From Selaginella moellendorffii (taxonomy: Eukaryota; Plantae; Lycopodiophyta): 31,542 bases of DNA. A program made the position numbers and the translations under genes. The DNA is taken from contig NW_003314337.1 of NCBI RefSeq assembly GCF_000143415.4, forward strand, positions 340,354 through 371,895. The letters run 5' to 3'. The notes below the pieces were generated by a model. The model worked only from the letters and a program-made list of their open reading frames with translations, did not search any database and was not told the origin of the DNA. Position 1 is the stretch's first letter. Each line of letters starts with the position of its first letter. Of the stretch, positions 4,782 through 26,119 are shown one piece after another.

Positions 4782-4956
<175 letters not shown>

Positions 4957-6359
4957 AGTGTGGTGTGGCCAAAAAATTTCATAAGTATGAAAGCCTATGA
5001 ACAAAAGAAGTTAATAGAGGCATCTTATGGAGGTAGGCTTGTGGCAAAGGTCTCAACCCCATGTATAAGAATATGTTTATGGAGAAGAAGTCATTTAGAT
5101 CATCAAGAAGAAGCTAGATCTTCCAAGATTGGCATAAAGATTGATCTCTTTTGTTCATAGGCTTTTCATACTTAATGAAATTTTTTCCTCTTTGCCATAT
5201 CAGTTTTTCTCTTGCCACATAAGCATCTATGTTGCAAACTAGAATGAGTTTTATCTAGAGGCCCCCGCACAAGGCAATAGAGAATCTTTGTATTTCTTCA
5301 AGGAACCTTGTAGTTATTTCTGACTTTTTAAATATAAACTTTAGCAAAAAAAGGCCATAAATTGATGATTTCACTTCCTAAATGTTAATGATGCCATATG
5401 CCAACTTAAACAAGTTGAGATTGTTATGGAAATCAAATTCCACCTACAAAAAAAATTTTGAACTGAAAAGAGAAGTATTAAAAGCATGATAAACCTTAAC
5501 TTTTTAACATTGAATAAAATCTCAATTCCACACATATAGTACATCAAGAAGAAAAGTCCAAAAATATTGATGTTACTGAGCCTCTTACTTAGTCCAATGG
5601 ATTGAATTTTTTGTTATTTTCTTGAATCCACATTTCTAGGATTTTGGAAGAAAAAAACAAAAAACTCAATTGATCCTAAACAAGAAGAGAAGTCTATACT
5701 AAAACTTATTACTTTGATCATTAGGATTTACATCTCATTTCTTCTCAAAACTTATAAGAGACAAATAAAAAATTTGATTAATAAATTTATAGGATCTAAG
5801 AAGAAAAAAAGAGTTGAAAGAGAGGAGAAGGTGAGGGAGTGTAACACATTGTGGTTTTCACCTTTTATCTTATGGTGATTTATCATAGAATAACCATGAA
5901 GTGAAATTTAAACCCTTTATATACTATATGTCACATATCACATACCATATGCCATATGTCCTAAGGATAGTGGTGTAGAGTTTCAAGGCCTTGAGCCACT
6001 AAATGAAGGAATGAAGCCAACTTCTAAGCATGGAGCCAAGGAGTAATGGAATAGGAGCATGGAGTGACTCCCAAGTGTTCAGCCTAAGGAGTGAAGGGAC
6101 AAAAGCACATAGTGACTTGAAATAGACCTAAAGTATCCAGTGTCCCAATGCCAAAACCAACACACAAAATGGAGCCAAACGGAGTCTAGCATTATTTCAA
6201 TATACTGGTGGCTTAACGCAAAGATATGAGTACTCCACTAACATAGTATGGAATTTGGGTTTAAACTCAAGCCAAATGCAAAACAAAGATAGGCACACAA
6301 GCGGGAGCTAGATTATGCCTCAGGTTGGTCGGGCATGCCAGACCTACCCACTATCCTTA

Positions 6360-7812
6360 TGTAAGCAACTAAATTTTCCATTTTACTTTAATCACTTAAC
6401 CACACTTCTAACCACTTGGAAGAGTTTCATTCACAACCTCTATAAGTCCTATTCCAAACTTGGGGCTTGCTAACCCCGAGAATGGCATCTATGCCATTTA
6501 ACCTTTGCACTTGGTCCTAGTGCTCCACGTGTTCGATCCCATAACCAACACCCAAAGGTACCATCAACATATCAGCCTGTTATACTAAGGCCATGCTCAT
6601 TCACATTTGTCACACTGGTGATCCAACACCACCTACATCATAGTCCCGTCTTTAAAAAATTGGGCCATCCATCCATGAGTGATCATCCTAGATCCACCCC
6701 TTAGCATCTTTAGGATGCCCACAAACATAGGGAACAACTTTCCTCAATATCCCTTTTTCGGTCCCTACTAAGTCCCTTTCTATCCATGGCTATGTTTGCT
6801 AACACTGCCACTAAGTCAAGGTGCATAGGCCAAACCACTAAGTCCCACTGTCCTCTGGAATTTCCTCACCATATGATTGTATCCTTGGTCACTACACTAG
6901 AGGAGTGCTCCTCTTCCTTTTTACAGTCTGCAGCCATGGGGCTAGAGTGAGGCTCTGTTGAGCCACACCAAGGTATCTAAGTAGTAGTGCCACCCACGTT
7001 TGGACTAGGAGCATCGACCATTCAATCTCCCGGGGGAACTAGAGTTGGCTCTTGAACACTTCATCAAATTACAAGAAGGTTATGCCCACATGTTGGGTGA
7101 TAATATATCCATTGAGGAGTCTAAAGTTAGAGTGAATATAGACAAACAAATGGGGGGTCACACTAGCCTTTTCTAGCCAAACTGGCTCCACAAATGTCTA
7201 ACCCCCCCACACTCTCCTTACTATATTTTTGGAACCCCCTACAACCCCCCCTTCCCCCCCCCCCCCCCCCTCCCCCCTTCGGGGGGATGATCGCTTTGGG
7301 CTTTCACCCAACCCAACAACCTATATTAGTAATATTTGGACTCAGACTTGGACTTAGATTCTGACTCGTTCTTAGTCTCAATTGGTCTTAGTTCCACCTC
7401 AGACTCCATCTCGGACTCCATCTCGGGTCCATCTCAAACTCCATTTTAGACTCCATCTCAAGTCCATCTCAGACTCCATCTCGGGGTCCATCTTAGACTC
7501 CATCTTAGACTCCATCTCGAACTTTATCTTAGGTCCATTTTGGACTCCATCTCAGATTTATCTCGGGCTCCATCTTGGACTCTTTTATGTGTCATGTGTT
7601 GGTCTTGTTGTGTCCCTTTTCTAGAAACTCATTTATTGCTCACTTTATACTCATTCCTTCAGCACTTTGTTGAGAATTCCACTTCCGCTCTTGACCTTTC
7701 AAGTCAGAGCTTTTAATCCTAACGTATTACACTTGTTTGGCTTCCACTTCGGCCACTACCATGTGGCACCCTTTTGGCTCCACTTTTGGGGCTCTAGGAT
7801 TTGTGTTTCACA
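6360..7812 (-). mobile_element. Solo LTR, family A (older, diverged copy)
   Basis: Reverse complement of the family A LTR, with termini tgtaagcaac...gtttcaca. TSD cctta (6355-6359) / cccta (7813-7817). The empty site atccttactata is visible in the partner B LTR at ~27944. Confidence 0.9.
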
Positions 7813-7990
7813 CCCTACTATACATTTGGAACCCCCCCTTGAGGAATACATACTTTGGGCTTTCACCCTTAGCCACCCTTAATACCAGGAGTTAGTCTCT
7901 AGGGCAAGCTTGAAACTTACTAAATATGAAATATCCCTAGATTGTGAATTTAGACACTAGAGGAACACTATTGTGTTTAGGATAATTTCT

Positions 7991-8171
7991 ACACTTTCCA
8001 TAAATAGCATTTAGGACTGGAATAAGACTTATACAAAAGATATGATAGTGAGGGTGTTTAGCAAATTCCATAGATATGCCAAATGAGCAAATTTAGACAC
8101 TTTCCATAAATAGCATTTAGGACTGGAATAAGACTTATACAAAAGATATGATAGTGAGGGTGTTTAGCAAA
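7991..8171 (+). repeat. Identical 75-bp direct repeat (7991-8065, 8097-8171)
   Basis: acactttccataaatagc...gggtgtttagcaaa occurs twice with a 31-bp spacer. The partner LTR has a single copy (~28191-28265). Confidence 0.95.
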
Positions 8172-8699
8172 AACAGTAAGGTATCATTCAATGTTATTGA
8201 GGAACTAATCTCAATATACAAGGGTTTTTGTCAAGCTAGTGCAAGACAAAGCAAAAGAGAACTAAAAACTAATAAACTAGGCTTAGCACCTGTACTTAGC
8301 CAAATAAATATAAGGTAGAAACTTCCTATATGTTTTTAGCTAAGCATATTTGGCTTGGAACACTTGAACAAGAGGGGCTGGTAAAAGGAATCAGCAATAC
8401 CAACCTTTTGCTGTCATGGTAGTAAGGAGTGGTAATGCAAAAAGCCAAAAGCCATCAAAGAAAACAATTAACCATCATGAAAGATTATTAATCATTCTAT
8501 CAAAAGAGAGATGCATAATCATCGTCGAAGAAGAAACCTACCATCTTGAAGAATGACAAATCATTCTTATAACAACAATAATCAAGCAAAACCTTTTGAC
8601 AAGGATAATCAACTATTCTAGATGATAGTTAATCATCACTAATGATTGCTAGATGCAAATGCTAACTTCAGCATCGAAGCTAATGAGCCAGAATGCCTT

Positions 8700-10799: not shown

Positions 10800-13026
10800 A
10801 ACAGTCTTTGATGAAGTCTACAAGAAATCATTAGCTACAAAGCAACTAATAATCACTCTTCAACTTACCTTTACAAGACCTAAACACTAAACTCATATCA
10901 CCAAGTTATATACTTGTTCAACATGAACGTAATACCCTAGATATGAGATATAGGAACATGGACAAGCACAAATTAAATGACCACTTGAATCCAATCAAAT
11001 TACAATAAGTTCACCAACATGTATAGCCAATAGTTCTAAGCATGCCTTGAAGAGGCTAGCTATGCATGATCAACACTTAGTCAAAACTAAGGTGAAGACT
11101 ATGAGATGGACTTATATCATCATACAACTGTGAGACACAAAATCTCTAGGCCCCAAAGTGGAGCCGGAAGGGCGCCATGTGGTAGTGGCCGAAGCAAAAG
11201 CCAAACTAGCGTAACACGTTTGGACTAAAAACTCCGACTTGAAAGGTCGAGAGCGGGAGTGGAACTCCCAACAAAGTGCTCGAGGAATGAGCATGAAGCG
11301 AGCAATAAGCGAGGCTCTAAAAAGGGACCCAAAAGGACCAACACACGACACATGGAAGTGTTCGAGATGGAGACCGAGACTGAAACCGAAACCGAGACCG
11401 AAAGCCCAAAGCGTTCGTCTCCCAGACCCTGGGGGGTTTAATGAGCTCCAAAAGTATAGTAGGGGGAGGACTGCAGTGGAGCTAGTTTTGCCAGGAAAGG
11501 CCAATTTGGCCCAGGAAGGCTATACCCAGTGTTGGGTGATGAACTGCCCACTGGGAAGTCCAAAGCTAGAGTGAATACGGCAACTTGGTGAAGTGTTCAA
11601 GAGCCGGCTCTAGTTCCCTCGGGAGATCGATTGGTCGATGCTCCCAGTCCAAGTGTGGGTGGCACTACCTACTTGGATACCTGGTGTGGCTCAACGGAAC
11701 CTCGCTCTAAGCCCACGGCTAGAGCACCCAAAGGTGGAAGGTAGGGAGAGTACCCATGAGGCTCGCATAAGGCCACAGTGTTCCGAAGTGTTGCCCCAAG
11801 GTCCCAGACTGTGAAAAGGAAGTGGAGCCGTCCTATAGTATAGAGACCAGAGATATAGTCATGTGAAGAGGAAGTCCCAGAGGACCGTGGGACTTAGTGG
11901 TCAGGCTTGTAGGCCTTGATCCAGTGGCAGTGTGGGCGAACACAGCCATGGGCAGAAAAGGACTTGATGGGGACCGAAAAGGGGATATTGGGGAAGGCTA
12001 TCCCCCATGTCTATGGGCATCCTAAGGGTGCCAAGGAGTGGATTTGGGATGATCACTCATGGACGGATGGCCTAGTCTTTGAGAGACAGGACTGTGATGT
12101 AGGTGGTGTTAGACCACCGATGTGACCAAGGTGAATGGGCATGGCCTTAGCGTAACGGGTTGATATATCAGTTGTACCTTGGGGTGTGGGTCATGGGATC
12201 GGACACATGGAGCACTTGGACCAAGTGCAAAAGTTAAGTTGCGGGGATGCCATTCTCGGGGTTAGCAAGCCCAAGTCCAAAATAGAACTTATGGAGGTTG
12301 TGAGTGAGACTCCTCCATGTTTGGAGGTGTGGTTAAGTGACTAAAGTAGAATGGAAGAATTAGTCCCTTACAACAACCTCCTTATAGACAAAGTTATAGT
12401 ACAAGTATTAACATTTTAAACTTAAACAATTAAGTTGGACATCACTATCCTCAGCCCAAATGTAGAGCTACCAAAACCAAATCAAGATCACTAAGAGCTC
12501 ATTATTCTTATAGAGTTTAACAAAATGCAAAGTGCAACCTGGCACCAAGCACAATGCTATAGAAAAAAAGGCATAAAGATCACCTTTCTAGAAAAGTGTA
12601 ACAATCATTTTATTATACTAACTCTAGACTTTATCCAATTTAATTGTTTTAGCCCCAAAAGTTAACATCCCTTTTGGGCCATATCATACAAATTATTTAC
12701 TAAGGTTTAAGTTAATTAAAGTTAACTCTAACCCTTTCACTAGTTTGTATTGGCTTACAAAAACAGAATGTTTTCGAGTAAAATCAACTATTGGAAAAGC
12801 TTAAGAAAATTTATGAAAATTTTCCCATCCTAGAAAACAATGACTCTTAGTCTAGAAATGCAAACTTTCAAAACTCAACCAACTTCTTTTTACTAACAAC
12901 TTCACATAGGTTCACCTCAACACTAATTATCATAACCTAGCAGTATGTCTAAGCATTAAATATCATTGCCTATATATTTGATATCCAACATCGACATCTG
13001 CAAAAATACAAAATGAACATCTAAAA
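10800..13026 (-). pseudogene. Highly decayed copia-type integrase region relic (split by solo LTR 11129-12372)
   Basis: YVHVEQV at ~10911-10931 resembles post-integrase AYVHVP. An FSRK-like fragment lies near 12585-12600. No open frame. Confidence 0.3.
11129..12372 (+). mobile_element. Solo LTR, family A (1244 bp, almost no minisatellite)
   Basis: Termini tgtgagacac...cccttaca. Perfect TSD acaac (11124-11128, 12373-12377). Colinear with 17969-19836 apart from the array. Confidence 0.95.
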
Positions 13027-13031
13027 CTCGA

Positions 13032-13226
13032 TGTAAACTCCTGAGTTTGGACTTCCCGGGAGGTCATCTAGCCCAGTATTATTCTAACCCAAGGACGCTT
13101 AACCCCAAATATTCCAAGACCTTTAACCGATTGGAAAACGGGGTGCACTCTTGTTCATGGGCCCTTTCCCTCTATATTTGAACCCCAATGGATCGTTTCT
13201 CGAGTTGTTCTCTTTGGTTGCTTACA
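13032..13226 (-). repeat. Cassandra 3' LTR (195 bp)
   Basis: tgtaaac...gcttaca. About 15 substitutions versus the reconstructed partner LTR (by eye), no indels. Confidence 0.93.
13049..13103 (-). promoter_or_regulatory. 5S rRNA-derived Pol III internal promoter segment (A-box, IE, C-box)
   Basis: Minus strand GTTAAGCGTCCTTGGGTTAGAATAATACTGGGCTAGATGACCTCCCGGGAAGTCC aligns ungapped, 45/55, to the angiosperm 5S segment as I recall it (GTTAAGCGTGCTTGGGCGAGAGTAGTACTAGGATGGGTGACCTCCTGGGAAGTCC). Confidence 0.9.
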
Positions 13227-13241
13227 ATCCACCACGCTTCC
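13227..13241 (-). promoter_or_regulatory. Polypurine tract of Cassandra
   Basis: Minus strand ggaagcgtggtggat directly before the 3' LTR TGT. Confidence 0.75.
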
Positions 13242-13417
13242 CTACAAGTTCACGCCCTCGTGAATGGAAGCTGAGAGCCACAGCTCTCCCGAGAGCCCCG
13301 CTCTCTTGACACCCTACCCCTTGGGTCGAGCTCAGCGGGAACAAACTGGACCAGCCAAATGTCAATCAACATGTGGTGTGATTCCCTTAGCCAACCAACA
13401 GAGTCGGACCCGAGACC

Positions 13418-13429
13418 GCTTCGATACCA
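13418..13429 (-). promoter_or_regulatory. Second (internal) tRNA-iMet-type PBS
   Basis: Minus strand tggtatcgaagc. It is preceded by tt and a 6-bp LTR-end remnant (plus strand tgcaag, 13432-13437). 13294-13437 duplicates 17796-17938. Confidence 0.85.
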
Positions 13430-13438
13430 AATGCAAGT

Positions 13439-14703
13439 TCACCACGTCCTTGGTGCCCTTTGCACCAAAGTGTTCAAGTTAGATATGCCGAGCTTTCACT
13501 CTAAGCAATCTAACCGTGCATCACGACTCCGAGGCATCCCTCGTTTGGTGGTGTGCCCAAACCAGTCTCCTCACTGAGAGTCCATGACCACCGAAATATG
13601 AATATCCTCATATTCCAAACCATCACCACGCCCTAGTGATTTGGGACTCGAACCCAAGCACTAGAGGGTCGGGACTCGAACCCAACCTCCATATATGCAT
13701 CTACGGACGGCATCACCCAGGATGCCTGGCGTGACTCCCCACACCGGTGCACCAACTTATACTCAAAGCGCGCTATAGATCACAGCTTAGGAACCTAGTT
13801 CCTCCACACTGCCAAGTCCTCTCACTTGACAAGTTGGTGATCATGCATGGACTCCTCCATGCTTGGCCCCATGGCCCACCCTTTTTGAAGTTATCACCTT
13901 CAACTAGGGTATTTGTTCCCCTAACTTGCCAATCTCGCTTGGCAAGTCCTCCGACCTCTGTAACATGGTTCTTGCACAAGCGTGAAAACCCTTGATCATC
14001 GACTTTCGTTCAAAACCCTCTCTTTGAACACTTAGGAACTACTTCCCTAACCTTGATAGCCTTGCCTCATGGCAAGCTTCAAGACCATGCTTCTGCTGCG
14101 CCACTCTGATTTTGCGCGTTCCTTGAACCATTTACGCTTGGCCTTTCTAGGTACTAAGCTACCTAGAATCGTCTTTAGGAACCTTGAAGGAACTCTGTCC
14201 CTTAGCTTGCTAAGGCTTCCCTTTTTGCAAGCTTTCCAATTACCATATAGTCTAACATGGACAATTCCATATTTTAGACTCTCCATAATATCACGGTTGC
14301 TAGCGACAACACCCTCGAGCCCCCACTTGATTCTCCACTCCCAGCTGGCATAACCAACCTTAGTTATGCCCTTCAATTCCTATGGTTCGGTTCTATCCCC
14401 TTACTTCTTGCTTTTGGCTTCACACCTTTCCTTCGGTCATTCTCCTCCAGACCAAGAGGATAGCTTTGCACTTTCTAACATGCATTAGCAAGTATTCTTA
14501 GGGATGAACCTACCCGATAGCCTAGGGAGTGGTTCCTCCATCCAGGTATGCTCACCCTATAATCCCACACACCGGGATTACGTTGTTGCTTATGGGCTTT
14601 TACATGCCCATTACTAGCCTTGCCAAAATTCCATTTTTGGCTTTGTCCAATTCGAGTAGATGGTCTTCTCCTGTCTCCACCACCTTGGACATTTGGATAG
14701 CAC
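13439..14703 (-). mobile_element. Cargo segment: middle internal region of family A LARD
   Basis: Reverse complement of ~21367-22628. The paired ORFs 14069..14353(+) / 21722..21997(-) and 13747..13995(+) / 22071..22319(-) are near-identical. Confidence 0.93.
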
Positions 14704-16323
14704 TAATTTTTCCATTCTACTTTAGTCACTTAACCACACCTTCAACCACTTGGAGGAGTCTCACTCACAACCTCCTTAAGTCCAATTCAGGACTTGGGAC
14801 TTGCTAGCCCCGAGAATGGCATCCATGCCACTCATCCCTTGCACTTAGTCCAGGTGCTCCACGTGTCCAGTCCCAAGACTAACACCCCAAGGTACCACCG
14901 ACCTACTAGCCCGTTACGCTAAGGCCATGCCCCTTTACCTTGGTCATACCGGTAGTCTAACACCACCTGCATCACAATCCCATCTCTCAAGGACTGGACC
15001 ATCCGTGGGCCATGAGTGATCATTCCAGATCCACTCCTTAGCATCCTTAGGATGCCCACAGACATGGGGAATAGCCTTCCCCAATATCTCTTTTCTGGTC
15101 CCCACCAAGTCCCTTTCTGCCCATGGCCGTGTTCACCAACACTACCACTGGATCGAGGCCCACAGGCCCGACCACTAAGTCCCACGATCCTCTAGGACTT
15201 CCTCACCACACGACTGTGTCCTTGGTCACTACCCCAGAGGACTACTCCTCTTCCTTTCCACAGTCTGGACCTTTGGGACAACATTTCGGAACACCGTGGC
15301 CTTACGCGAGCCACTTGGGTACTCTCCTCACCTTTCGCCTTTAGGTGCTCTAGGCATGGGCTTAGAGCGAGGTTCCGTTGAGCCACGCCTAGTATCCAAG
15401 TAGGTACTGCCACCCACACTTGGACTGGGAGCATCGGCCAGTCGATCTCCTGGGGGAACTAGAGCCGGCTCTTGAACACTTCACCAAGCTACCCCGCTTG
15501 TCGGTCCGTATTCACTCTAGTCTTGGACTTCCCAGTGGTCAGTTCATCACCCAACACTGGGTCTGGCCTTCCTGGGCCAAACTGGCTCCACTGCAGTCCT
15601 CCCCCTTACTATACTTTTAGAGCTCACCAAACCCCCCATGGTCTAGGAGACAAACGCTTTGGGCTTTCACCCTCTCAGACTCGAACTCGAACTCGGACTC
15701 GGACTCGGACTCGGACTCGGACTCGGGCTCCGTCTCGGCCTCCGCCTCGGTCTCGGTCTCGGTCCCGGTCTCGGTCTCGGTCTCGGTCCCGGTCCCGGTC
15801 CCGGTCTCGGTTCGGTCTTGGTCCCGGTCTCGGTCTCGACCTCGGACTTCATCTCGGGTCCTTCTCGGACTCCATCTCGGATTCCATCTTGGGTCCATCT
15901 CGGACTCCATCTCGGACTCTGTCTCGGTCCATCTCGGACTCCATCTCGAGCTGCATCTCGGGTCCATCTTGGACTCCATCTCGGGTCCATCTTGGACTCC
16001 ATCTCGGACTCCGTCTCGGTCCATCTCAAACTCCATCTCGGACTCCACTTCGGACTCCATCTTGGACTCCATCTCGGACTCCACCTCGGACACTTCCATG
16101 TGTCATGTGTTGGTCCTTTTTGGGTCCCTTTTTGGAGCCTCGCTTATTGCTCGCTTCGTGCTTGTTCCTCGAGCCCTTGTTGGGAGTTCCACTCTCGCTC
16201 TCGACCTTTCAAGTCAGAGCTTTTAGTCCAAACGTGTTACGCTCGTTTGGCTTTCGCTTCTGCCACTACCATGTGGCACCCTTTCCAGCTCCACTTTGGG
16301 GCCTAGGGATTTTGTGTCTCACA
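14703..16323 (-). repeat. Cargo segment: family A LTR lacking its terminal ~6 bp (cttaca)
   Basis: Reverse complement of 17969-19830. Intact tgtgagacac end at 16323 next to the PPT (16324-16337). Array at ~15677-16092. Confidence 0.93.
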
Positions 16324-17490
16324 ACTCCACCACCTATAGACGAAGTTCGATGTCCTCATCGAACGGTAAACCCTTTTTATAAAGTAACACCCGCAGATAT
16401 TACCATTCCCATCCTTGGCACTCGGCCAATATTTGTCTATGGTTTGACCCTGAAGGCTCACCATGCCTTGTCCATCCTCTAAGGAGGATAGTCTCTCCAA
16501 CTTAGAGACTGATTGGACCACTTGTGGTGGTTCTTTGTGTTTATTGGTTTAGTTCTCGCTAAACTTGTTAGAGACACCGTCTCTATCTCAATCCCACTAC
16601 TCCATCTTGAGTAGTCTCAATTTTCATCGATATAACCTTTGCACTTTGGAATGTTTACTTTTGACTTCTTGAAGTCAATTTTCCTAGGTGTCTTCGACAC
16701 CTTGCATTGCACATATTGTGCAAGTCCACTTCCCTATCCTAGGAAATTCTTTACTTGAGGGCACCATCATCCTCTTTTCTATTTTGTGCCACCTTTGGCA
16801 CTACGTTCCAATTATCATCATTTGTGCCAGGGCTGTCCACGGCCCTATCCTTTGGCTACTTTGCCGCTCTTCACTTGGAGCTTTTACTTCGCCAAATTGG
16901 AGCATTTGGGAATCTATCCTTGGAAGTCCACTTTCTTTTCCGCAATCCGTTAGCATCAAACACATTTATGTTCCTTGGCTAACTTTGCCATTTGGATTCC
17001 TTCCCATGATTCCCATGGCTCTTTTCTTGGCCACTAGTCTTTTGCTCCTATCCTTGATTGTTGCACTCAGCAACATAGGATCACTACCTCCATTTTTGAG
17101 GTTTCTTTTCGGTTCCATAGCAAACACTTTGCTTTGCCAAGTCCAGAGGGTGTTCACCCCTAATACGTCTCTTTAACATTTTCTATCAGGGGCTCTATAC
17201 ACGGCCCAACTTTTTGAGACCTTCCCTTGGATCTTTTATAGAGACTACTTTCTTCGGACTTACTATGCCATAGCAGTGACATAGCTCATTTCCCATAGGT
17301 GCTCTTCCCACTTGGTCACCTTAACCAAGCCACACCATTATCAATAGGTCAAATCAACACTTTGAACTAGGAATCATATCCCTTAACCCAAACAAAGACC
17401 TTGTCCTTGTTTAGCCACAAAATCACCGAGTGATCTCATCTTGACCCCTTAATAGGTCTAACAATAAGAATTAGGTCTTCCAGACCCTTC
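16324..17490 (-). mobile_element. Cargo segment: 3' internal region and PPT of family A LARD
   Basis: Reverse complement of ~22738-23885. Confidence 0.9.
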
Positions 17491-17497
17491 TAAGTTG

Positions 17498-17786
17498 TCT
17501 GTCCACGAGTGGTCATCCCAGATCCACTCCTTAGCATCCTTAGGATGCCCACAGCCATGGGGAATAGCCTTCCCCAACATATCTTTGTCAGTTCCTACCA
17601 AGTCCCTTTTTCGTCCATGGCCATGTTCACCAACACTGCCACTAGATCAAGGCCCGCAGGCTCGGCTACTAAGTCCCATTGTCCTCTGGGACTTCCTCAC
17701 CATGTGACCATATCCGTAGTCACTACACTAGAGGACTGCTCCTCCTCCTTACACCCATTTGGGACTTCGGGACAACATTTCGGAAC
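17498..17786 (-). repeat. Cargo segment: internal fragment of a family A LTR
   Basis: Reverse complement of ~19239-19524 (also matches ~15005-15292). Confidence 0.9.
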
Positions 17787-17918
17787 CCTGCAAGTGCCTC
17801 GCTCTCTTGACACCCTACCCCTCGGGTCGAGCCCAGCAGGAGCAAACTGGACCAGCCAGATGTCAATCAATATGTGGTGCGATTCCACTATCCAACCAAT
17901 AGAGTCGGACCCGAGACC

Positions 17919-17930
17919 GTTCCGATACCA
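17919..17930 (-). promoter_or_regulatory. tRNA-iMet-type PBS of Cassandra
   Basis: Minus strand tggtatcggaac, 2 nt from the LTR end at 17933. Confidence 0.85.
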
Positions 17931-17932
17931 AA

Positions 17933-17968
17933 TGTAAGCTCCTGAGTTTGGACTTCCCGAGAGGTCAC
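17933..17968 (-). repeat. Cassandra 5' LTR, left part (3' portion of the 5S domain)
   Basis: tgtaagctcctgagtttggacttcccgagaggtcac matches 13032-13067. Confidence 0.92.
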
Positions 17969-18690
17969 TGTGAGACACAAAATCCCTAGGCCCCAAAGTG
18001 GAGCCGGAAAGGGTGCCACGTGGTAGTGGCTGAAGCGAGAGCCAAACGAGCGTAACACGTTTGGACCAAAAGCTCCGACTTGAAAAGTCAAGAGCGGGAG
18101 TGGAACTCCCAAAGAAGTGCTCGAGGAACGAGCACGAAGCGAGCAAAAAGCGAGGCTCCAAAAAGGGACCCAAAAGGACCAACACATGACACGTGGGAGT
18201 GTCCGAGATGGACTCGAGTTGGAGTCCGAAGTGGAGTCCGAGATGGACCTGAGTTGGAGTCCGAAGTGGAGTCCGAGATGGACTCGAGTTGGAGTCCGAA
18301 GTGGAGTCCGAAATGGACCCGAGTTGGAGTCCGAAGTGGAGTCCGAGATGGACCCGAGTTGAAGTCCGAAGTGGAGTCCGAGATGGACCCGAGATGGAGT
18401 CCGAGATGGAGTCCGAAGTGGAGTCCGAGGTGGACCCGAGATGGACCCGAGTTGGAGTCCGAAGTGGAGTCCGAGATGGACCCGAGATGGAGTCCGAGAT
18501 GGAGTCCGAGATGGAGTCCGAGGTGGACCCGAGATGGACCCGAAATGGAGTCCAAGATGGAGTCCGAGATGGACCCGAGATGGAGTCCAAGATGGAGTCT
18601 GAGATGGACCCGAGATGGACCCGAGATGGAGTCCGAGATGGAGTCCGAGATGGAGTCCGAGATGGAGTCCGAAGTCGAGACCGAGACCGG

Positions 18691-18722
<32 letters not shown>

Positions 18723-19836
18723 TCGGGACCGAGACCGAGACCGAGGCCGAGGCCGAGACCGAGCCCGAGCCCGAGTCTGAGTCCGAATCCGAGTCCGAGT
18801 CCGAGTCCGAGTCCGAGTCCGAGTCCGAGTCCGGAGCCTGAGAGGGTGAAAGCCCAAAGCGTTCATCTCCCAGACCCTGGGGGGTTTGGTGAGCTCCAAA
18901 AGTATAGTAAGGGGGAGGACTGCAGTGGAGCCAGTTTGGCCAGGAAAGGCCAGTTTGGCCCAGGAAGGCCAGACCCAGTGTTGGGTGATGAACTGACCAC
19001 TGGGAAGTCCAAGACTAGAGTGAATACGACAAGCGGGGTAACTTGGTGAAGTGTTCAAGAGCCGGCTCTAGTTCCCCCGGGAGATCAACTGGCCGATGCT
19101 CCCAGTCCAAGTGTGGGTGGCACTACCTACTTGGATACCAGGCATGGCTCAACGGAACCTCGCTCTAAGCCCATGGCTAGAGCACCTAAAGGCGAAAGGC
19201 GGGGAGAGTACCCAGGTGGCTCGCGTAAGGCCACGGTGTTCTGAAATGTTGTCCCAAAAGCCTAGACTGTGGAAAGGAAGAGGAGCAGTCCTCTGGGGTA
19301 GTGACCAAGGACACAGTCGTGTGGTGAGGAAGTCCCAGAGGACCATGGGACTTAGTGGTCGGGCCTATGGGCCTCGATCCAGTGGCAGTGTTGGTAAACA
19401 CGGCCAGGGGCAGAAAGGGACTTGGTAGGAACTGACAAAGGGACTTTGGGGAAGGCGATTCCCCAGGTCTGTGGGCATCCTAAGGATGCTAAGGAGTGGA
19501 TCTAGGATGACCACTCGTGAACAGATGGCCCAGTCTTGGAGAGACGGGATGGTGATGCAAGTGGTATTGGACCACTAGTGCAGCAAAGGTGAATGGGCAT
19601 GGCCTTAGCGTAACGGGCCGAGATGTCAGTGGTACCTTTGGGTGTCGGTCTTCGGACCGGACACGTGGAGCACTTGGACCAGGTGCAAGTGTTGAGTGGC
19701 ATGGATGCCATTCTTGGGGCTAGCAAGTCTTGCCAAGTCCTGAATTGGACTAATGGAGGTTGTGAATGAGACTCCTCCAAATGGTCGGAGGTGTGGTTAA
19801 GTGACTAAAGTAGAATGGAAAATTTAGTCGCTTACA
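17969..19836 (+). repeat. Family A 5' LTR (1868 bp)
   Basis: tgtgagacac...gtcgcttaca. Outside the array it differs from the 3' LTR by about 11 transitions and 2 small indels (by eye). Confidence 0.96.
18201..18836 (+). repeat. Compound LTR minisatellite: 11/12-mers (TGGACCCGAGA/T, TGGAGTCCGAGA, TGGAGTCCGAAG), then hexamers CCGAGA and CCGAGT
   Basis: Read directly from the sequence. Confidence 0.95.
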
Positions 19837-19839
19837 ACT

Positions 19840-19851
19840 TGGTATCAGAGC
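19840..19851 (+). promoter_or_regulatory. PBS complementary to tRNA-iMet 3' end
   Basis: tggtatcagagc, the canonical plant iMet PBS, 3 nt after the LTR. Confidence 0.95.
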
Positions 19852-20129
19852 TGTTCCTTAGTCCGACTTTTATTGGCGCTCAAGTATATCACCATTGATA
19901 TTGGCATCGGAAGGTCCTAGGAGTGGTCCTATCCTTGAGGAGTAGCACGTCGAGAGGACATGGCTCTCCACTCGAGTTCATGCATGAACTTGGGCGTGAT
20001 GTGGTGGATAAAAAAAAGGGGCCAATAAGGGAACGACTTTGGGATCTTGGGAACAGTATATGGTTTTCCTCAAAGAGTTGGGGATGTGATCCAGATGAGC
20101 GTTTGACTTAGCAAACTGGCTAGTGTAGT

Positions 20130-22000
20130 TGTGGTAAACAACTACAGTTGGGATCACGGGAAAGATAAAGACTCCAAAGCAATAAAGGAGTCACAAGATT
20201 TTCCTCATATAGTTGAGGTTGGTGCTCATGAATGTGAGACCAGAAGTAATGACCGTGGGAGGTCAAATACGGAAGAGGACTCAAGTCCTTGAAAAGGTAG
20301 CCGGGGCTACCTCTAATAAATGCTGGAACAACCCCAGGTGTTGGGGGTGTATTAAGTGGATGAGTTGGTGTTCTCATCACATGGACAAGTAGTCCTAAGG
20401 GGCAAAGGTTGCCCCCAGAGAACAAAATCAAGTGTCGGAGTAACACTTGTGAAAATAGTCCTTTTGAGTAGGACAGGAATGCAAGAAGTGTATTCCAGTG
20501 AGCTAGTGCCTCACAAGTAGGACCTTACGGGTCTGTGGATTAACCAAGTCCAAAACTGCTGGATGACTCAAGTAGAGTCAACGGATGGTCCTAAAAGGAC
20601 TGATGGAAGCATTTGGACTGAGGTGTGTTGTACCCCACAAAGGATGGGGGGGGATCATAGGATCCAAGGATGAGAACAGAGGGTATCTCATCGATGGCAA
20701 AATATGCCATGCTAAAATTATGGGAAAGGTGTTCCCAGAAGAAAACAACTTTGACATAAAGTTGTGTGTGACCTCTATGGTGCAATGCTAACGGATGGTT
20801 GGCATGAGAAAGAGCGGTGTTGGTCTTGGCAAAGACTTAGACACGAAGGGGAAATGTCATAGAGGTAGGCTCGTGGAGCCGATGGTGTGGAGACACCAAA
20901 TGTGCCAAGGTGTGATACCTTGAGGCTATGTTGGTGGGTTCATGAGAACCCCTTGCCAAAGGAATCCCAATGGAAATGGGAATAGCATAGCCTAAGCTGC
21001 AGAGCATGCAGTTGGAGTGTGGTGACCCAGATAATGATGGAGGTGTGAAAGCACCAAGCAATGAGTTGTAGGACTTGACAACTATGAGGTAACTAAGCAA
21101 GAGGTGCAAAATAACTGGTTAAACAGGTAGAAGGTAGCTACCCAAGACTTCTTAATAGCATAGGGAAGTTGGATATACCCTTACGGGGGATAAGTTGCTT
21201 GTGTTGCGATATAGTAAGTTAATGTCATAAAAGGAAATACTCATTGTCAAGAAAGCCATCATTGGGACACCCGAACACTCTAGAACACCAGAAGGTGGTG
21301 TTTGATGTCGCGAGGGCAATGGATAAAGCCCAAGGGACTAAGTCCCTAGCGAATGATGGATAGAAGGTGCTATCCAAATGTCCAAGGTTGCGGAGACAGG
21401 AGAGGACTGTCTACCCGAGTTGGATAAAGCTAAAAATGGAATTTTGGCAAGGCTAGTGATGGGCATGTAAAGGCCCATAAGCAACAATGTAATCCCAGTG
21501 TGTGGGATTATAAGGTGAGCATACCCGGGTTGAGGAACCACTCCCTAGGCTATTGGGTAGGTTCATCCCTAAGAATCTTGCTAAAGCATGATAGAAAGTG
21601 CAAAGCTATCCTCCTAGTCTAGAGGAGAATGACCAAAGGAAAGGTGTGAAGCCAAAAAGCAAGAAGGGGATAAAACCGAACCGTAGGAATCAAAGGGCAT
21701 AACCAAGGTTGGTTATGCCAGCTAGGAGTGGAGAATCAAGTGGGGGCTCGAGAGTGTTGCCGCTAGCAACCGTGATGCCATGGAGAGTCTAAAATATGGA
21801 ATTGTCCATGTTAGACTATGTGGCATTTGGAAGGCTTGCAAAACGGGAGGCCTTAGCAAGCTGAGGGACAGAGTTCCTTCAAGGTTCCCAAAGACGATTC
21901 TAGGTAGCTTAGTACCTAGAAAGGCCAAGTGTAAATGGTTCATGCAACGTGCGAAATCAGAGTGGCACAGCAAAAGCGTGGTCTTGAAGCTTGCCATGAG
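20130..22000 (+). pseudogene. Heavily decayed Ty3/gypsy gag-PR-RT relic
   Basis: Frameshifted fragments in gypsy order: RGLKS (~20275, gag-like), LD*GV (~20614, protease LDSGA-like), KYSLSR (~21235, RT KYPLPR-like), LVMG (~21453, LVMPFG-like). Confidence 0.45.
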
Positions 22001-22320
22001 GCAAGGCTATCAAGGTTAGGGGAGTAGTTCCCGAGTATTCAAAGAGGGGGCTTTGAACGAAAGTCGATGGTCAAGGACTTTCACGCTTATGCAGGAACCA
22101 TGTTACAGTGGTCGGAGGACTTGCCAAGCGAGATTGGCACGTCGGGGGAACAAATACCCTAGTTGAAGGTGATAACTTCAAAAAGGGTGGGCCATGGGGC
22201 CGAGCATGGAGGAGTCCATGCATGATCACAGACGTGTCAAGTGAGAGGACTTGGTAGTGTGGAGGAACTAGGTTCCTAAGCTGTGATCTGTAGCGCGCTT
22301 TAAAAATAAATTGGTGCACC

Positions 22321-22433
22321 GGCGTGGGGAGTCACGCCAGGCATCTTGTGTGATGCCGTCCGTAGATGTATATACGGAGGTTGGGTTCGAGTCCCGACCC
22401 TCTAGTGCTTGGGTTCGGGTCCCAAATCACTAG
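22321..22433 (+). other. Cluster of four hairpins, two with tRNA T-loop / Pol III B-box sequence
   Basis: ggcgtg-N6-cacgcc; ggcatc-N6-gatgcc; gttggg-ttcgagt-cccgac; ctagtgcttggg-ttcgggt-cccaaatcactag. Second copy at ~13632-13746 (minus). Confidence 0.55.
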
Positions 22434-23871
22434 GGCGTGGTGATGGTTTGGAATATGAGGACACTCATATTTCGGTGGTCATGGACTCTCAGTGGGGAGA
22501 CTGGTTTGGGCACACTGCCAAGCGAGGGATGCCTCGGAGTCGTGATGCACGGTTAGATTGCTTAGTGTGAAAGCTCGGCATATCTAACTTGAACGCTTTG
22601 GTGCAAGTGGCACCAAGGACGTGGTGAGTGAGATGGGGACACCTAATCTCAGTTGCTATGGACCCTTGGCCGGAAGGGCTGGCTTGGGTGCACCGCCAAG
22701 TGTGGGGGATGCCCCCGGGGTCGTAGTTAACAAGTTAAAGGTCTGGAAGACCTAGTACCTATTGACAAACCTGTTAAGGTGCCGAGGTGAGATCACTAGG
22801 TGATCTTGTGGCTAAATAAGGACAAGGTTCTTATTTGGGTTAAGGAATAAGGTTCCTAGTTCAAAGTGTTGATTTGAACTATTGATGATGGTGTGGCTTG
22901 GTCAAGGTGACCAAGTGGGAAAAGCACCTTAGGGAAATGAGCTATGTCATTGCGATGGCATAGTGTGTCCAAGGAAAGTAGTCTCTAAAGAGACCCATGA
23001 GAGGGTCACAAAGTTGGGCCGAGGATAGAGCCCACAGCAGAAGATGCTAAAAGAGACTTACTAGGGGTGAACACCCTAGTCTTGGCAAAGCAGAGCCTTT
23101 GCTATGGAATCAAAAGAATACCTCAAGGAGGGAGGTAGAGATTCGATGTTGCTCGGTGCAACAATCAACGGATAGAAGCAAAAGATGAGTGGCCAAGATA
23201 GGGCCGTGGAATCCCTGGGAAGGAATCCAAGTGACAAAGTTAGGCGAGGAACATTAATGTGTTGGACACTAACAAATTGTGGGAAAGGAAGTGTGTTTCC
23301 AAGGATGGATTCCGAATTGCTCCGATTTGGCGAAAGTGGAAGCTCCAAGGGAGGGAGCGGTAAGGTAGCCAAATGATAGGGCCATGAACAGCCCTAGCAC
23401 AAAGTATGATAACTGGAACTTTGGCACGAAATAGAAGAGAGGATGATGGTGCCCTCGAGTAGAGAACTTCCTAGGATGGGAAGTGGAGTTGCACAAAAGG
23501 TGCAAGGCAAGGTGTCGGAGACACCTAGGAAATTGACTCCAAGGAGTCAAAATTCAAAGTTCCAAAGTGCAGAGGTTATATCGATGGAAATTGAGACTAC
23601 TCGAGAAGGAGTAGTGGGATTGACTTAGAGAAGGGTCTCTAAGAGGTTTAGCGAGAACTAAACCAATAAAAGGAGAGAACCATTACATGTGGTCCAATCA
23701 GTCTCTAAGTTGGAAAGACTACGCTCCTTAAAGGATGGAAAAGGCATGGTGAGCCTTTGGTGTCAAACCATAGACAAAGATTGGCTAGGTGCCAAGGATG
23801 GAAATGGTAACACGTGTGGGTGTTACTTTATGAAAGGGTTTACCGTTCGATGAGGACATCGAACTTCGTCT

Positions 23872-23885
23872 ATGGGTGGTGGAGT
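23872..23885 (+). promoter_or_regulatory. Polypurine tract of family A
   Basis: atgggtggtggagt directly before the 3' LTR. Confidence 0.85.
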
Positions 23886-24701
23886 TGTGAGACACAAAAT
23901 CCCTAGGCCCCAAAGTGGAGCCGGAAAGGGTGCCACGTGGTAGTAGCTGAAGCAAGAGCCAAACGAGCGTAACACGTTTGGACCAAAAGCTCCGACTTGA
24001 AAAGTCAAGAGTGGGAGTGGAACTCCCAAAGAAGTGCTCGAGGAACGAGCACGAAGCGAGCAAAAAGCGAGGCTCCAAAAAGGGACCCAAAAGGACCAAC
24101 ACATGACACGTGGGAGTGTCCGAGATGGACTCGAGTTGGAGTCCGAAGTGGAGTCCGAGATGGACCCGAGTTGGAGTCCGAAGTGGAGTCCGAGATGGAC
24201 TCGAGTTGGAGTCCGAAGTGGAGTCCGAGATGGACCCGAGTTGGAGTCCGAAGTGGAGTCCGAGATGGACTCGAGTTGGAGTCCGAAGTGGAGTCCGAGA
24301 TGGACCCGAGTTAGAGTCCGAAGTGGAGTCCGAGATGGACCCGAGTTGAAGTCCGAAGTGGAGTCCGAGATGGAGTCCGAAGTGGAGTCCGAGGTGGACC
24401 CGAGATGGACCCGAGATGGAGTCCGAAGTGGAGTCCGAGGTGGACCCGAGATGGACCCGAGTTGGAGTCCGAAGTGGAGTCCGAGATGGAGTCCGAGATG
24501 GAGTCCGAGATGGAGTCCGAGGTGGACCCGAGATGGACCCAAAATGGAGTCCGAGATGGAGTCCGAGATGGACCCGAGATGGAGTCCAAGATGGACCCGA
24601 GATGGACCCGAGATGGAGTCCGAGATGGAGTCCGAGATGGAGTCCGAGATGGAGTCCGAGATGGAGTCCGAGATGGAGTCCGAAGTCGAGACCGAGACCG
24701 G

Positions 24702-24733
<32 letters not shown>

Positions 24734-25884
24734 TCGGGACCGAGACCGAGACCGAGGCCGAGGCCGAGACCGAGCCCGAGCCCGAGTCTGAGTCCGAATC
24801 CGAGTCCGAGTCCGAGTCCGAGTCCGAGTCCGAGTCCGAGTCCGGAGCCTGAGAGGGTGAAAGCCCAAAGCGTTCGTCTCCCAGACCCTGGGGGGTTTGG
24901 TGAGCTCCAAAAGTATAGTAAGGGGGAGGACTGCAGTGGAGCCAGTTTGGCCANNNNNNNNNNNNNNNNNNNNNNNNNNNNNNNNNNNNNNNNNNNNNNN
25001 NNNNNNNNNNNNNNNNNNNNNNNNNNNNNNNNNNNNNNNNNNNNNNNNNNNNNTCCAAGACTAGAGTGAATACAGACCGACAAGCGGGGTAGCTTGGTGA
25101 AGTGTTCAAGAGCCGGCTCTAGTTCCCCCGGGAGATCGACTGGCCGATGCTCCCAGTCCAAGTGTGGGTGGCACTACCTACTTGGATACCAGGCATGGCT
25201 CAACGGAACCTCACTCTAAGCCCATGGCTAGAGCACCTAAAGGCGAAAGGCGGGGAGAGTACCCAGGTGGCTCGCGTAAGGCCACGGTGTTCCGAAATGT
25301 TGTCCCAAAAGCCTAGACTGTGGAAAGGAAGAGGAGCAGTCCTCTGGGGTAGTGACCAAGGACACAGTCGTGTGGTGAGGAAGTCCCAGAGGACCATGGG
25401 ACTTAGTGGTCGGGCCTATGGGCCTTGATCCAGTGGCAGTGTTGGTAAACACGGCCAGGGGCAGAAAGGGACTTGGTAGGAACTGACAAAGGGACTTTGG
25501 GGAAGGCGATTCCCTAGGTCTGTGGGCATCCTAAGGATGCTAAGGAGTGGATCTAGGATGACCACTCGTGAACAGATGGCCCAGTCTTGGAGAGACGGGA
25601 TGGTGATGCAAGTGGTATTGGACCACTAGTGCAGCAAAGGTGAATGGGCATGGCCTTAGCGTAACGGGCCGAGATGTCAGTGGTACCTTTGGGTGTCAGT
25701 CTTCGGACCGGACACGTGGAGCACTTGGACCAGGTGCAAGTGTTGAGTGGCATGGATGCCATTCTTGGGGCTAGCAAGTCCCAAGTCCTGAATTGGACTA
25801 ATGGAGGTTGTGAATGAGACTCCTCCAAATGGTCGGAGGTGTGGTTAAGTGGCTAAAGTAGAATGGAAAATTTAGTCGCTTACA
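23886..25884 (+). repeat. Family A 3' LTR (contains a 100-N gap; array ~24118-24847)
   Basis: Direct repeat of 17969-19836. Confidence 0.96.
24954..25053. other. Assembly gap (100 N placeholder; about 65 bp in the 5' LTR)
   Basis: Flanks map to ~18942 and ~19008 of the 5' LTR. Confidence 0.95.
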
Positions 25885-25889
25885 GTCAC

Positions 25890-26048
25890 CCAGCCTAGTA
25901 CTATTCTAACCCAAGGACACTTAACCCCAAATATCCCAAGACCCTTAACCGATTGGAAAAGGGGGTGCACTCTTGTTCATGGGCCCTTTCCCTTTATATT
26001 TGAACCCCAATGGATCATCTCTCGAATCGTTCTCTTTGGTTGCTTACA
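25890..26048 (-). repeat. Cassandra 5' LTR, right part (A-box/IE at 25890-25925)
   Basis: Matches 13068-13226; followed by TSD ctcga. Confidence 0.92.
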
Positions 26049-26119
26049 CTCGATCATGAAGACCATATCTTTAGATATCCACATTGCACTAACACTTTTC
26101 TTCAACCACTTTCAAGATC

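What the first reader, a model, noticed from the sequence alone, without database searches (positions are those of the whole stretch)
13032..17968. Giant chimeric Cassandra: 5S-promoter TRIM termini enclosing ~4.35 kb of another retroelement family
Seen: two 195-bp 5S-domain LTRs share one TSD (CTCGA). Between them on the minus strand are PBS, a short internal domain, 4.35 kb of family-A LARD sequence (13439-17786), a 6-bp LTR-end remnant, a second PBS, a full ~205-bp internal domain and the PPT. The cargo has no TSD and no intact pair of element ends, so it is not an ordinary nested insertion. Known: Cassandra TRIMs are sub-kilobase, non-coding and can form tandem arrays; a single unit here would be ~595 bp. 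Inference: a tandem Cassandra had its middle LTR and PPT replaced by LARD sequence of the same sense. This is what template switching between co-packaged RNAs would give, making Cassandra a cargo-carrying vector.
Basis: partly seen in the sequence, partly recalled or inferred. Interest (0 to 1): 0.88.

Follow-up and report, generated by a model that had tools for sequence, protein, structure and literature searches.

The report
Cassandra-LARD chimeric retrotransposon insertion fossil
One old insertion in the spikemoss genome has the ends of a tiny gene-less 5S-type retrotransposon around 4.35 kb of a large gene-less one. It most likely records two element RNAs copied together, but nothing shows that it ever moved again as a cargo carrier.

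Summary
The anatomy is real, with one correction. The Cassandra-type element (minus strand) spans 13032-26048, not 13032-17968. Its 5' LTR is split after 36 nt by a younger, intact 7.9-kb family-A element (17969-25884, TSD GTCAC). The shared TSD CTCGA lies at 13027-13031 and 26049-26053.

Between two copies of PBS plus interior lie 4.35 kb of non-coding family-A sequence, all in the Cassandra sense. It is a circular permutation of one A unit. In sense order it reads: a 289-nt LTR piece, the 3' interior, one whole LTR lacking its last 8 nt, then the mid interior. About 100 nt are missing at the opening point and about 1.5 kb including the A PBS are deleted.

My best reading (about 0.55) is a single aberrant reverse transcription. 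In that reading the cDNA left a Cassandra RNA 7-9 nt past its PBS, copied A RNA round through the normal R-mediated transfer, and returned to a Cassandra interior. The chimeric cDNA was then integrated once.

The main rival (about 0.3) is DNA-level capture of circular or extrachromosomal A DNA in a tandem Cassandra.

The "cargo-carrying vector" claim has no support. No second copy could be tested, and majority A copies continue canonically at three junctions.

Earlier scan notes report at least seven similar Cassandra chimeras elsewhere in this genome.

The parts
13027..13031 (.). Target-site duplication CTCGA, left copy
   Evidence: Identical 5-mer at 26049-26053.
13032..13226 (-). Cassandra-type 3' LTR (195 bp; TG..CA ends). 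The 5S-like segment is at 13035-13122.
   Evidence: Rfam 5S_rRNA 23.7 bits, E 0.014, below the gathering score. 92.3% identical to the rejoined 5' LTR, K2P 0.083.
13227..13429 (-). Full Cassandra interior: PPT 13227-13242, interior, PBS2 13418-13429 (sense TGGTATCGAAGC)
   Evidence: Homologous to the post-PBS leader of family A.
13430..13438 (-). Spacer TT plus a 7-nt stub (sense ACTTGCA) resembling the Cassandra U5 end. Junction J1 lies at 13438/13439.
   Evidence: The spacer and PBS are Cassandra-type, not A-type. There is a 2-nt microhomology (GA) with A.
13439..14703 (-). Cargo segment 4: family-A interior, equivalent to 21367-22627 of the nested reference copy
   Evidence: 92.3% over 1265 nt. 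K2P 0.078.
14699..16323 (-). Cargo segment 3: one complete family-A LTR lacking its last 8 nt. Junction J2 at 14699-14703 joins it to the interior, with the A PBS and about 1.5 kb missing.
   Evidence: Microhomology GT/GCT at J2. In other copies the LTR end and PBS follow canonically (loose ends at 14702).
16324..17498 (-). Cargo segment 2: family-A 3' interior up to its PPT, equivalent to reference 22730-23885
   Evidence: 86% identity, K2P 0.156.
17498..17786 (-). Cargo segment 1: 289-nt internal fragment of a more divergent family-A LTR (reference 25289-25576). J3 lies at about 17498 and J4 at 17787-17795.
   Evidence: 85% identical to the reference LTR and 83.5% to the cargo's own LTR.
17789..17795 (-). 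Second copy of the 7-mer (sense ACTTGCA) at junction J4
   Evidence: Unexplained. A shared 7-mer in +-15-nt windows is expected about 5% of the time.
17796..17932 (-). Short Cassandra interior (about 120 nt, no PPT), PBS1 17919-17930, spacer TT 17931-17932
17933..17968 (-). Last 36 nt of the Cassandra 5' LTR
17969..25884 (+). Later nested intact family-A LARD-like element: LTRs 17969-19836 and 23886-25884, PBS at 19840, 4.05-kb non-coding interior, TSD GTCAC 17964-68 / 25885-89
   Evidence: No Pfam match in any ORF tested. Antisense to Cassandra.
25890..26048 (-). First 159 nt of the Cassandra 5' LTR
   Evidence: 92% identical to 13063-13226.
26049..26053 (.). Target-site duplication CTCGA, right copy

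Best explanation
This is a fossil of one aberrant reverse-transcription cycle in a virus-like particle that held both Cassandra-type and family-A (LARD-like) RNAs. The steps below are inferred from the anatomy.

1. Minus-strand cDNA started normally on a Cassandra RNA.
2. It switched into an A RNA at the position equivalent to 22627 and copied toward the 5' end. The 1.5 kb holding the A PBS was either skipped or already absent in the source.
3. It made the ordinary R-mediated transfer to an A 3' end. That rebuilt one complete A LTR. It then copied the 3' interior back to position 22730, about 100 nt from where it had entered.
4. It switched onto 289 nt of a second, more divergent A LTR, and then back into a Cassandra interior down to its PBS.
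5. Normal plus-strand transfer made two Cassandra LTRs, and integrase inserted the roughly 5.1-kb chimera once (TSD CTCGA).

Later a young A element landed in the 5' LTR.

Shown: the anatomy, the junctions, the single TSD, the same-sense orientation and the permutation. Inferred: the RNA-level route.
For: - One 5-bp TSD surrounds everything, and both flanks are AT-rich.
- The outer LTRs are 92.3% alike, as expected of a pair made in one cycle.
- All four cargo segments are in the Cassandra sense, whereas the integrase-made nested A element is antisense.
- J1 lies 7-9 nt upstream of a Cassandra PBS. This is where a template trimmed after strong-stop synthesis ends.
- The cargo is a circular permutation of a single A unit with one uninterrupted LTR in the middle. 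Its entry and exit points are only about 100 nt apart on a roughly 4-kb interior, a chance of about 2% for independent breakpoints.
- Those two points flank the most stable fold of the A interior: -98 kcal/mol, z -5.3, top 2 of 35 windows by energy.
- Junctions carry only 1-3 nt of microhomology.
- The Cassandra interior is homologous to the A leader and both use an iMet-type PBS, so a shared replication machinery is plausible.
- Complex elements with a single TSD have been attributed to template switching (PMC1950507). TRIMs that captured spliced exons are known (PMC4717578).
- Earlier scan notes, not checked by me, list at least seven Cassandra x LARD or chromovirus chimeras in this genome, mostly joined at the PBS.
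Against: - The route needs four or five non-homologous switches in one cycle, or a pre-deleted A source.
- The cargo is not uniform relative to the one reference copy. The LTR and mid interior are 91-96% identical to it, but the 3' interior is 81-90%. Under this model the 3' interior should share its source with U3.
- The same 7-mer sits at both ends of the cargo, which this model does not predict.
- No independent read or contig bridging any junction was listed, and no second copy was found.
- It rests on a single locus.
Confidence: 0.55

Rival explanations
1. DNA-level origin after integration. An ordinary tandem Cassandra (three LTRs, two interiors, one TSD) suffered a break in or near its middle LTR. 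Extrachromosomal family-A DNA then filled the gap: a linearised one-LTR circle plus a 289-bp LTR piece. Alternatively a circular A molecule entered by a single crossover at a 7-nt microhomology. Either way almost the whole middle LTR and the PPT were replaced.
For: - Three-LTR Cassandra and TRIM arrays with TSDs are common: 13% of intact copies in pear (PMC4079214) and widespread tandem-arrayed TRIMs (PMC4717578).
- A circle broken at one point also explains the circular permutation with a small loss at the opening point.
- The cargo is flanked by the same 7-mer, sense ACTTGCA, at 13432-38 and 17789-95. This is what single-crossover entry of a circle gives.
- A patchwork filler with 1-3 nt microhomologies is typical of end joining.
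- The mosaic divergence of the cargo fits several DNA pieces.
Against: - The two cargo pieces must both lie in the Cassandra sense by chance, about 1 in 4.
- The deletion must stop 7 nt short of the LTR/PBS boundary by chance, roughly 3% for a 600-bp unit.
- No trace of the middle LTR's 5' part remains.
- A shared 7-mer near two junctions is expected about 5% of the time.
- Recurrent PBS-centred Cassandra chimeras elsewhere in the genome point to reverse transcription, though these are unchecked notes.
Confidence: 0.3
2. Ordinary nesting followed by decay. One or two family-A elements (or a tandem A) were integrated into the middle LTR of a tandem Cassandra. At least four later deletions then removed the A termini, their TSD, most of the middle LTR, and parts of A.
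For: - Nesting is frequent here. An intact A sits in the 5' LTR at 17969-25884, and contig joints show another Cassandra inside an A LTR elsewhere.
- Illegitimate recombination is common in plant LTR elements (PMC13570524).
Against: - It needs at least four independent deletions plus a tandem or double A.
- It leaves unexplained why the two interior breakpoints (22627 and 22730) are only 100 nt apart and in permuted order.
- No A terminus and no 5-bp TSD survives.
Confidence: 0.08
3. Assembly artefact. The junctions were made by mis-joining reads of repeated families.
For: - The region consists of very high-copy repeats.
- No listed contig of four public runs bridges J1-J4. Two contigs of run X7 stop exactly at 13437/13438, but each has 12 mismatches and so comes from paralogues.
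Against: - The junctions share only 1-3 nt between partners, so an assembler had no repeat overlap to mis-join on.
- The structure is coherent: one TSD, paired LTRs, and the same sense throughout.
- The output lists only a tiny sample of the pieces laid.
Confidence: 0.04

Closest known systems
Template-switch 'complex' LTR retrotransposon insertions (Sabot & Schulman 2007, PMC1950507)
   Same: One 5-bp TSD around the whole structure, similar outer LTRs, and two interiors in one insertion. The proposed origin is aberrant strand transfer between co-packaged RNAs.
   Different: Those complexes join two copies of one family and keep a complete third LTR. Here the middle Cassandra LTR is reduced to 7 nt, and 4.35 kb of a different, non-coding family in permuted order sits in its place.
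Tandemly arrayed TRIMs and multi-LTR Cassandra (Gao 2016, PMC4717578; Yin 2014, PMC4079214; Kalendar 2020, PMC7215508)
   Same: Cassandra-type ends, a duplicated PBS-interior module, and flanking TSDs.
   Different: There is no middle LTR and no second PPT. The size is 5.1 kb without the later nest, against less than 1 kb per unit. The host is a lycophyte.
TRIM- and LTR-mediated sequence capture (Katydid-At1, cited in PMC4717578; GmaRetroS15 in PMC4717578; Bs1 of maize, cited there)
   Same: Foreign sequence of RNA origin lies between TRIM LTRs, with a 5-bp TSD.
   Different: The captured sequence there is spliced host-gene exons of a few hundred bp, and most captors have several copies. Here the cargo is another retroelement, in kb-scale permuted form, and only one copy is known.
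Other Cassandra x LARD or chromovirus chimeras noted by this scan in the same genome (s1-402654, s1-432119, s1-433142, s1-434229, s1-344386, s1-368670, s1-395586)
   Same: The same two kinds of partner. In s1-402654 the cargo is also circularly permuted. Each is a single insertion.
   Different: Those are described as joined exactly at the shared PBS. Here the joins lie 7-9 nt inside U5 and in mid-interior, with an internal deletion and an extra LTR fragment. I could not see their sequences.

Membership tests
Cassandra (5S-carrying TRIM) | TRIM architecture: short LTRs with TG..CA ends, an iMet-type PBS, a PPT, a short non-coding interior, and a unit under 1 kb | tested here: met
   195-bp LTRs, a PBS reading TGGTATCG.., a PPT at 13227-42 and an interior of about 205 nt. 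A plain unit would be about 595-600 bp.
Cassandra (5S-carrying TRIM) | 5S rRNA-derived segment with pol III control boxes in each LTR | tested here: inconclusive
   Rfam 5S_rRNA scores 23.7 bits, E 0.014, at 13035-13122 (-). This is below the gathering score of 38, and model positions 22-57 are absent. The C-box-like part is well conserved.
Cassandra (5S-carrying TRIM) | Sequence homology to described Cassandra elements of ferns and seed plants | not testable with these tools
   No plant repeat library or Cassandra reference sequence was on hand. The papers read report TRIMs in S. moellendorffii but no 5S-bearing one (PMC4717578), and Kalendar 2020 does not mention Selaginella.
Cassandra (5S-carrying TRIM) | 5-bp target-site duplication | tested here: met
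   CTCGA at 13027-31 and 26049-53.
LARD (large retrotransposon derivative), for family A | Long LTRs, a multi-kb interior without gag or pol, a PBS and a PPT | tested here: met
   In the nested copy the LTRs are 1.87 and 2.0 kb and the interior is 4.05 kb. The longest sense ORF in the interior is 79 aa. None of the 20 ORFs tested matched a Pfam retroelement domain; the one hit, RNHCP in a cargo ORF, is below threshold. The PBS reads TGGTATCAGAGC.
LARD (large retrotransposon derivative), for family A | Structured interior RNA | tested here: met
   33 of 35 windows of 220 nt fold with z below -1.2, and the lowest is -5.7. Conservation across copies was not tested.
Template-switch complex element / three-LTR tandem (L3I2) | A complete internal (third) LTR shared by two interiors | tested here: not met
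   Only a 7-nt U5-like stub is left at 13432-38. The first interior has no PPT and no LTR start after it.
Template-switch complex element / three-LTR tandem (L3I2) | A single flanking TSD and similar outer LTRs | tested here: met
   CTCGA on both sides, and outer LTRs 92.3% identical.
Mobile cargo-carrying element ('vector') | Two or more copies with identical internal junctions but different flanks and TSDs | tested here: inconclusive
   No plant genome could be searched. Only Logan contigs of four runs could be laid, and none listed bridges a junction. Majority A copies continue canonically at J1, J2 and J3. Searches by sequence in scan notes and by ORFs across J1 and J4 were blank.

The most novel reading that the evidence does not exclude
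The chimera was itself mobile. In this reading, Cassandra termini with PBS and PPT were enough to carry 4.35 kb of foreign retroelement sequence through further rounds of retrotransposition. Together with the other chimeras in this genome, that would make 5S-type TRIMs regular shuttles of LARD or chromovirus sequence, and a direct handle on the unknown helper of Cassandra.
Probability: 0.07. Interest if true: 0.7.

Novelty: new variant of a known kind. Interest (0 to 1): 0.4.

Why it matters
If the RNA-level reading is right, this locus is physical evidence that a 5S-type TRIM and a LARD family were packaged and reverse-transcribed in the same particles in a lycophyte. That bears on the old question of who mobilises Cassandra.

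The locus also preserves an unusually detailed trace of forced copy-choice. The trace has a U5 stub at the end of a trimmed template, an R-mediated transfer that rebuilt a whole LTR, and an exit near the entry point.

On its own it is one decayed, non-coding insertion with no sign of further activity. Its value lies mainly in a genome-wide census together with the other chimeras.

Tried and rejected
- **Rfam at gathering threshold over the whole window:** no hit. Only a sub-threshold 5S match appeared in a local search.
- **Public reads:** the single search gave only Logan contigs. Three runs are from one sample and one run is tiny. Laying them gave hundreds of thousands of short unitigs of the repeat families. 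No listed piece bridges J1-J4, and depth is unusable as copy number.
- A word search for similar wording was also blank.
- **ORF trick, using ORFs that span a junction to find other loci:** the protein search for the J4-spanning ORF found nothing. Exact look-ups of the J1- and J4-spanning ORFs found no record. These blanks prove nothing.
- **TATA-box search in the A LTR:** I wanted to test whether the 5' end of the LTR fragment coincides with the A transcription start. No TATA motif was found, so the idea is untestable here.
- **Flank test:** a sensitive self-search of the two flanks found no paralogous empty site in the window.
- **The 7-mer at both cargo ends as a significant signal:** downgraded after the chance estimate of about 5%.
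- **Two papers that could not be read because they are not held:** Kalendar 2008 and Maiwald 2021.


Full report
**What is there**

Self-comparison of the window and direct reading show a Cassandra-type TRIM on the minus strand.

- Its 3' LTR is 13032-13226 (195 bp).
- Its 5' LTR is in two pieces, 17933-17968 (36 nt) and 25890-26048 (159 nt).
- Between the pieces sits an intact family-A element, 17969-25884, on the plus strand. That element has TG..CA ends, LTRs at 17969-19836 and 23886-25884, and TSD GTCAC at 17964-68 and 25885-89.
- The rejoined 5' LTR is 92.3% identical to the 3' LTR (K2P 0.083).
- CTCGA flanks the whole structure at 13027-31 and 26049-53.
- Both outer flanks are 30-32% GC against 46-56% inside.

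The finding's end coordinate, 17968, is the break point in the 5' LTR.

The 5S label rests on a weak match. Rfam finds nothing at gathering threshold. A local search gives 5S_rRNA at 13035-13122 (-) with 23.7 bits, E 0.014, and model positions 22-57 missing.

**Order of parts between the LTRs (minus strand, 5' to 3')**

1. Spacer TT and PBS1 (17919-30).
2. A short interior of about 120 nt.
3. Junction J4 (17787-95).
4. The cargo (17786 down to 13439).
5. Junction J1.
6. A 7-nt stub (sense ACTTGCA, 13432-38) that resembles the Cassandra U5 end.
7. Spacer TT and PBS2 (13418-29).
8. The full interior of about 205 nt, ending with the PPT (13227-42).

The two PBS-interior copies are 88.6% identical over 149 nt, and 14 of the 17 differences are transitions. 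At several of these sites the contigs of public runs carry the letter of the other copy. Much of the difference is therefore later decay. The interior is a diverged homologue of the post-PBS leader of family A, as an earlier scan note said.

**The cargo**

I mapped the cargo against the nested reference copy. All four segments lie in the Cassandra sense. In sense order they are:

| Segment | Window coordinates | Equivalent in reference copy | Identity |
|---|---|---|---|
| 289-nt internal LTR fragment | 17786-17498 | 25289-25576 | 85% |
| 3' interior up to the A PPT | 17498-16324 | 22730-23885 | 86% |
| One uninterrupted A LTR lacking its last 8 nt | 16323-14699 | whole LTR | mostly 91-96% |
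| Mid interior | 14703-13439 | 21367-22627 | 92-93% |

- The A PBS and the first 1.5 kb of interior (reference 19829-21366) are absent.
- The junctions have 1-3 nt of microhomology.
- The cargo is therefore a circular permutation of one A unit, opened between 22627 and 22730. About 100 nt are lost there and an extra LTR fragment is added.
- Family A qualifies as LARD-like. The longest sense ORF in the interior is 79 aa. Twenty ORFs were tested and none matched a Pfam retroelement domain. The interior RNA folds far better than shuffles in nearly every window.

**Independent data**

- The only public runs offered were Logan contigs. Laid at 90% likeness they gave a flood of short unitigs.
- The loose ends are useful. 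At 13438 other copies continue with normal A interior. At 14702 they continue with the normal A LTR end and PBS. At 17507 they continue with normal A LTR sequence. So J1, J2 and J3 are not the family's usual form.
- No listed contig bridges any junction, and depth cannot be read as copy number. The assembly is therefore not independently verified, and the copy number of the chimera is unknown.
- A mis-join is unlikely all the same, because the partners share no overlap at the junctions.
- Attempts to reach other loci through junction-spanning ORFs and scan-note sequence search were blank.

**Mechanism**

The best fit is one aberrant reverse transcription, inferred as follows.

1. A minus-strand cDNA copied a Cassandra RNA through its PBS and 7-9 nt into U5. 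This is where a template trimmed after strong-stop synthesis ends.
2. The cDNA switched into an A RNA at 22627 and copied toward the 5' end.
3. It made the usual R-mediated transfer to an A 3' end, which explains the single complete LTR in the middle.
4. It copied back to 22730.
5. It left for a second A RNA and then for a Cassandra interior, and finished at PBS1.
6. Plus-strand transfer and integration followed.

This one process accounts for:

- the single TSD;
- the duplicated PBS-interior;
- the U5 stub;
- the uniform sense orientation;
- the permutation;
- the closeness of the entry and exit points, about 2% by chance. This is expected if the already copied part of the template had been degraded, or if the very stable fold at 22570-22790 stalls the enzyme (-98 kcal/mol, z -5.3).

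The mechanism is in line with the template-switch model for complex elements with one TSD (PMC1950507). It also agrees with RNA-level capture by TRIMs (PMC4717578) and with the scan's earlier notes of at least seven Cassandra chimeras in this genome, which I did not check.

**Weak points and rivals**

- Four or five non-homologous switches in one cycle are many.
- The 3' interior is more diverged from the reference than the adjoining U3. This hints at a mosaic of sources.
- The same 7-mer stands at both ends of the cargo (13432-38 and 17789-95). A flanking direct repeat together with a permuted insert is what single-crossover entry of a circular molecule gives. It also resembles a motif next to the Cassandra PPT (13243-49). 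The chance expectation is about 5%, so it decides nothing.
- A DNA-level origin remains a serious rival. It would be a tandem Cassandra, a form common in other plants (PMC4079214, PMC4717578), whose middle LTR was replaced by captured extrachromosomal A DNA.
- Nesting followed by four or more deletions is unparsimonious.

**The vector claim**

Nothing supports it. No second copy is known. The element is old, with 8% LTR divergence. The cargo also holds four T4 runs in sense that would hinder transcription from a 5S-type pol III promoter. Cassandra elements are thought to be limited in length for that reason (PMC10886601).

**Verdict**

The structure is real and neatly readable. It is most likely a recombinant cDNA fossil. 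That makes it a new variant of known template-switch chimeras, not a new kind of element, and it has not been shown to be a carrier.

Noticed in passing
window 17969-25884: A young, intact family-A LARD-like element (7,916 bp) lies inside the C-box-like part of the Cassandra 5' LTR. Its LTRs are 98-99% identical outside their repeat arrays. It has TSD GTCAC and is antisense to Cassandra. Both LTRs carry arrays of 12- and 35-nt repeats (18166-18480, 24118-24850).
   Followed up: partly
window 19837-23885: Almost the whole non-coding interior of family A folds much better than dinucleotide shuffles (z from -2 to -5.7 in most 220-nt windows). The most stable stretch is 22477-22806.
   Followed up: partly
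window 13227-13429 versus 19837-20010: The Cassandra interior aligns with the PBS-proximal leader of family A. The two non-autonomous families may share descent or replication signals.
   Followed up: partly
window 16221-16224 (joints in public contigs): Contig joints 13226|16221 and 16224|17932 look like the two ends of another Cassandra copy inserted in a family-A LTR somewhere else in the genome.
   Followed up: no
window 11127-12374 and 6360-7812: There are two further family-A-like LTRs without a partner. One (+ strand, 85-91% identical to the reference LTR) lies just left of the Cassandra target site. The other (- strand, about 80% identical) splits a different repeat, 5840-6359 plus 7838-8263, that recurs at 27445-28356.
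   Followed up: no
window 13265-17751 (table 3): At dozens of sites the window has T or A where most genomic copies have C or G. This is the pattern of C-to-T decay expected of an old, methylated repeat copy.
   Followed up: no
window 4786-4955: A short tandem array with a 6-nt register, about 99% self-identical.
   Followed up: no
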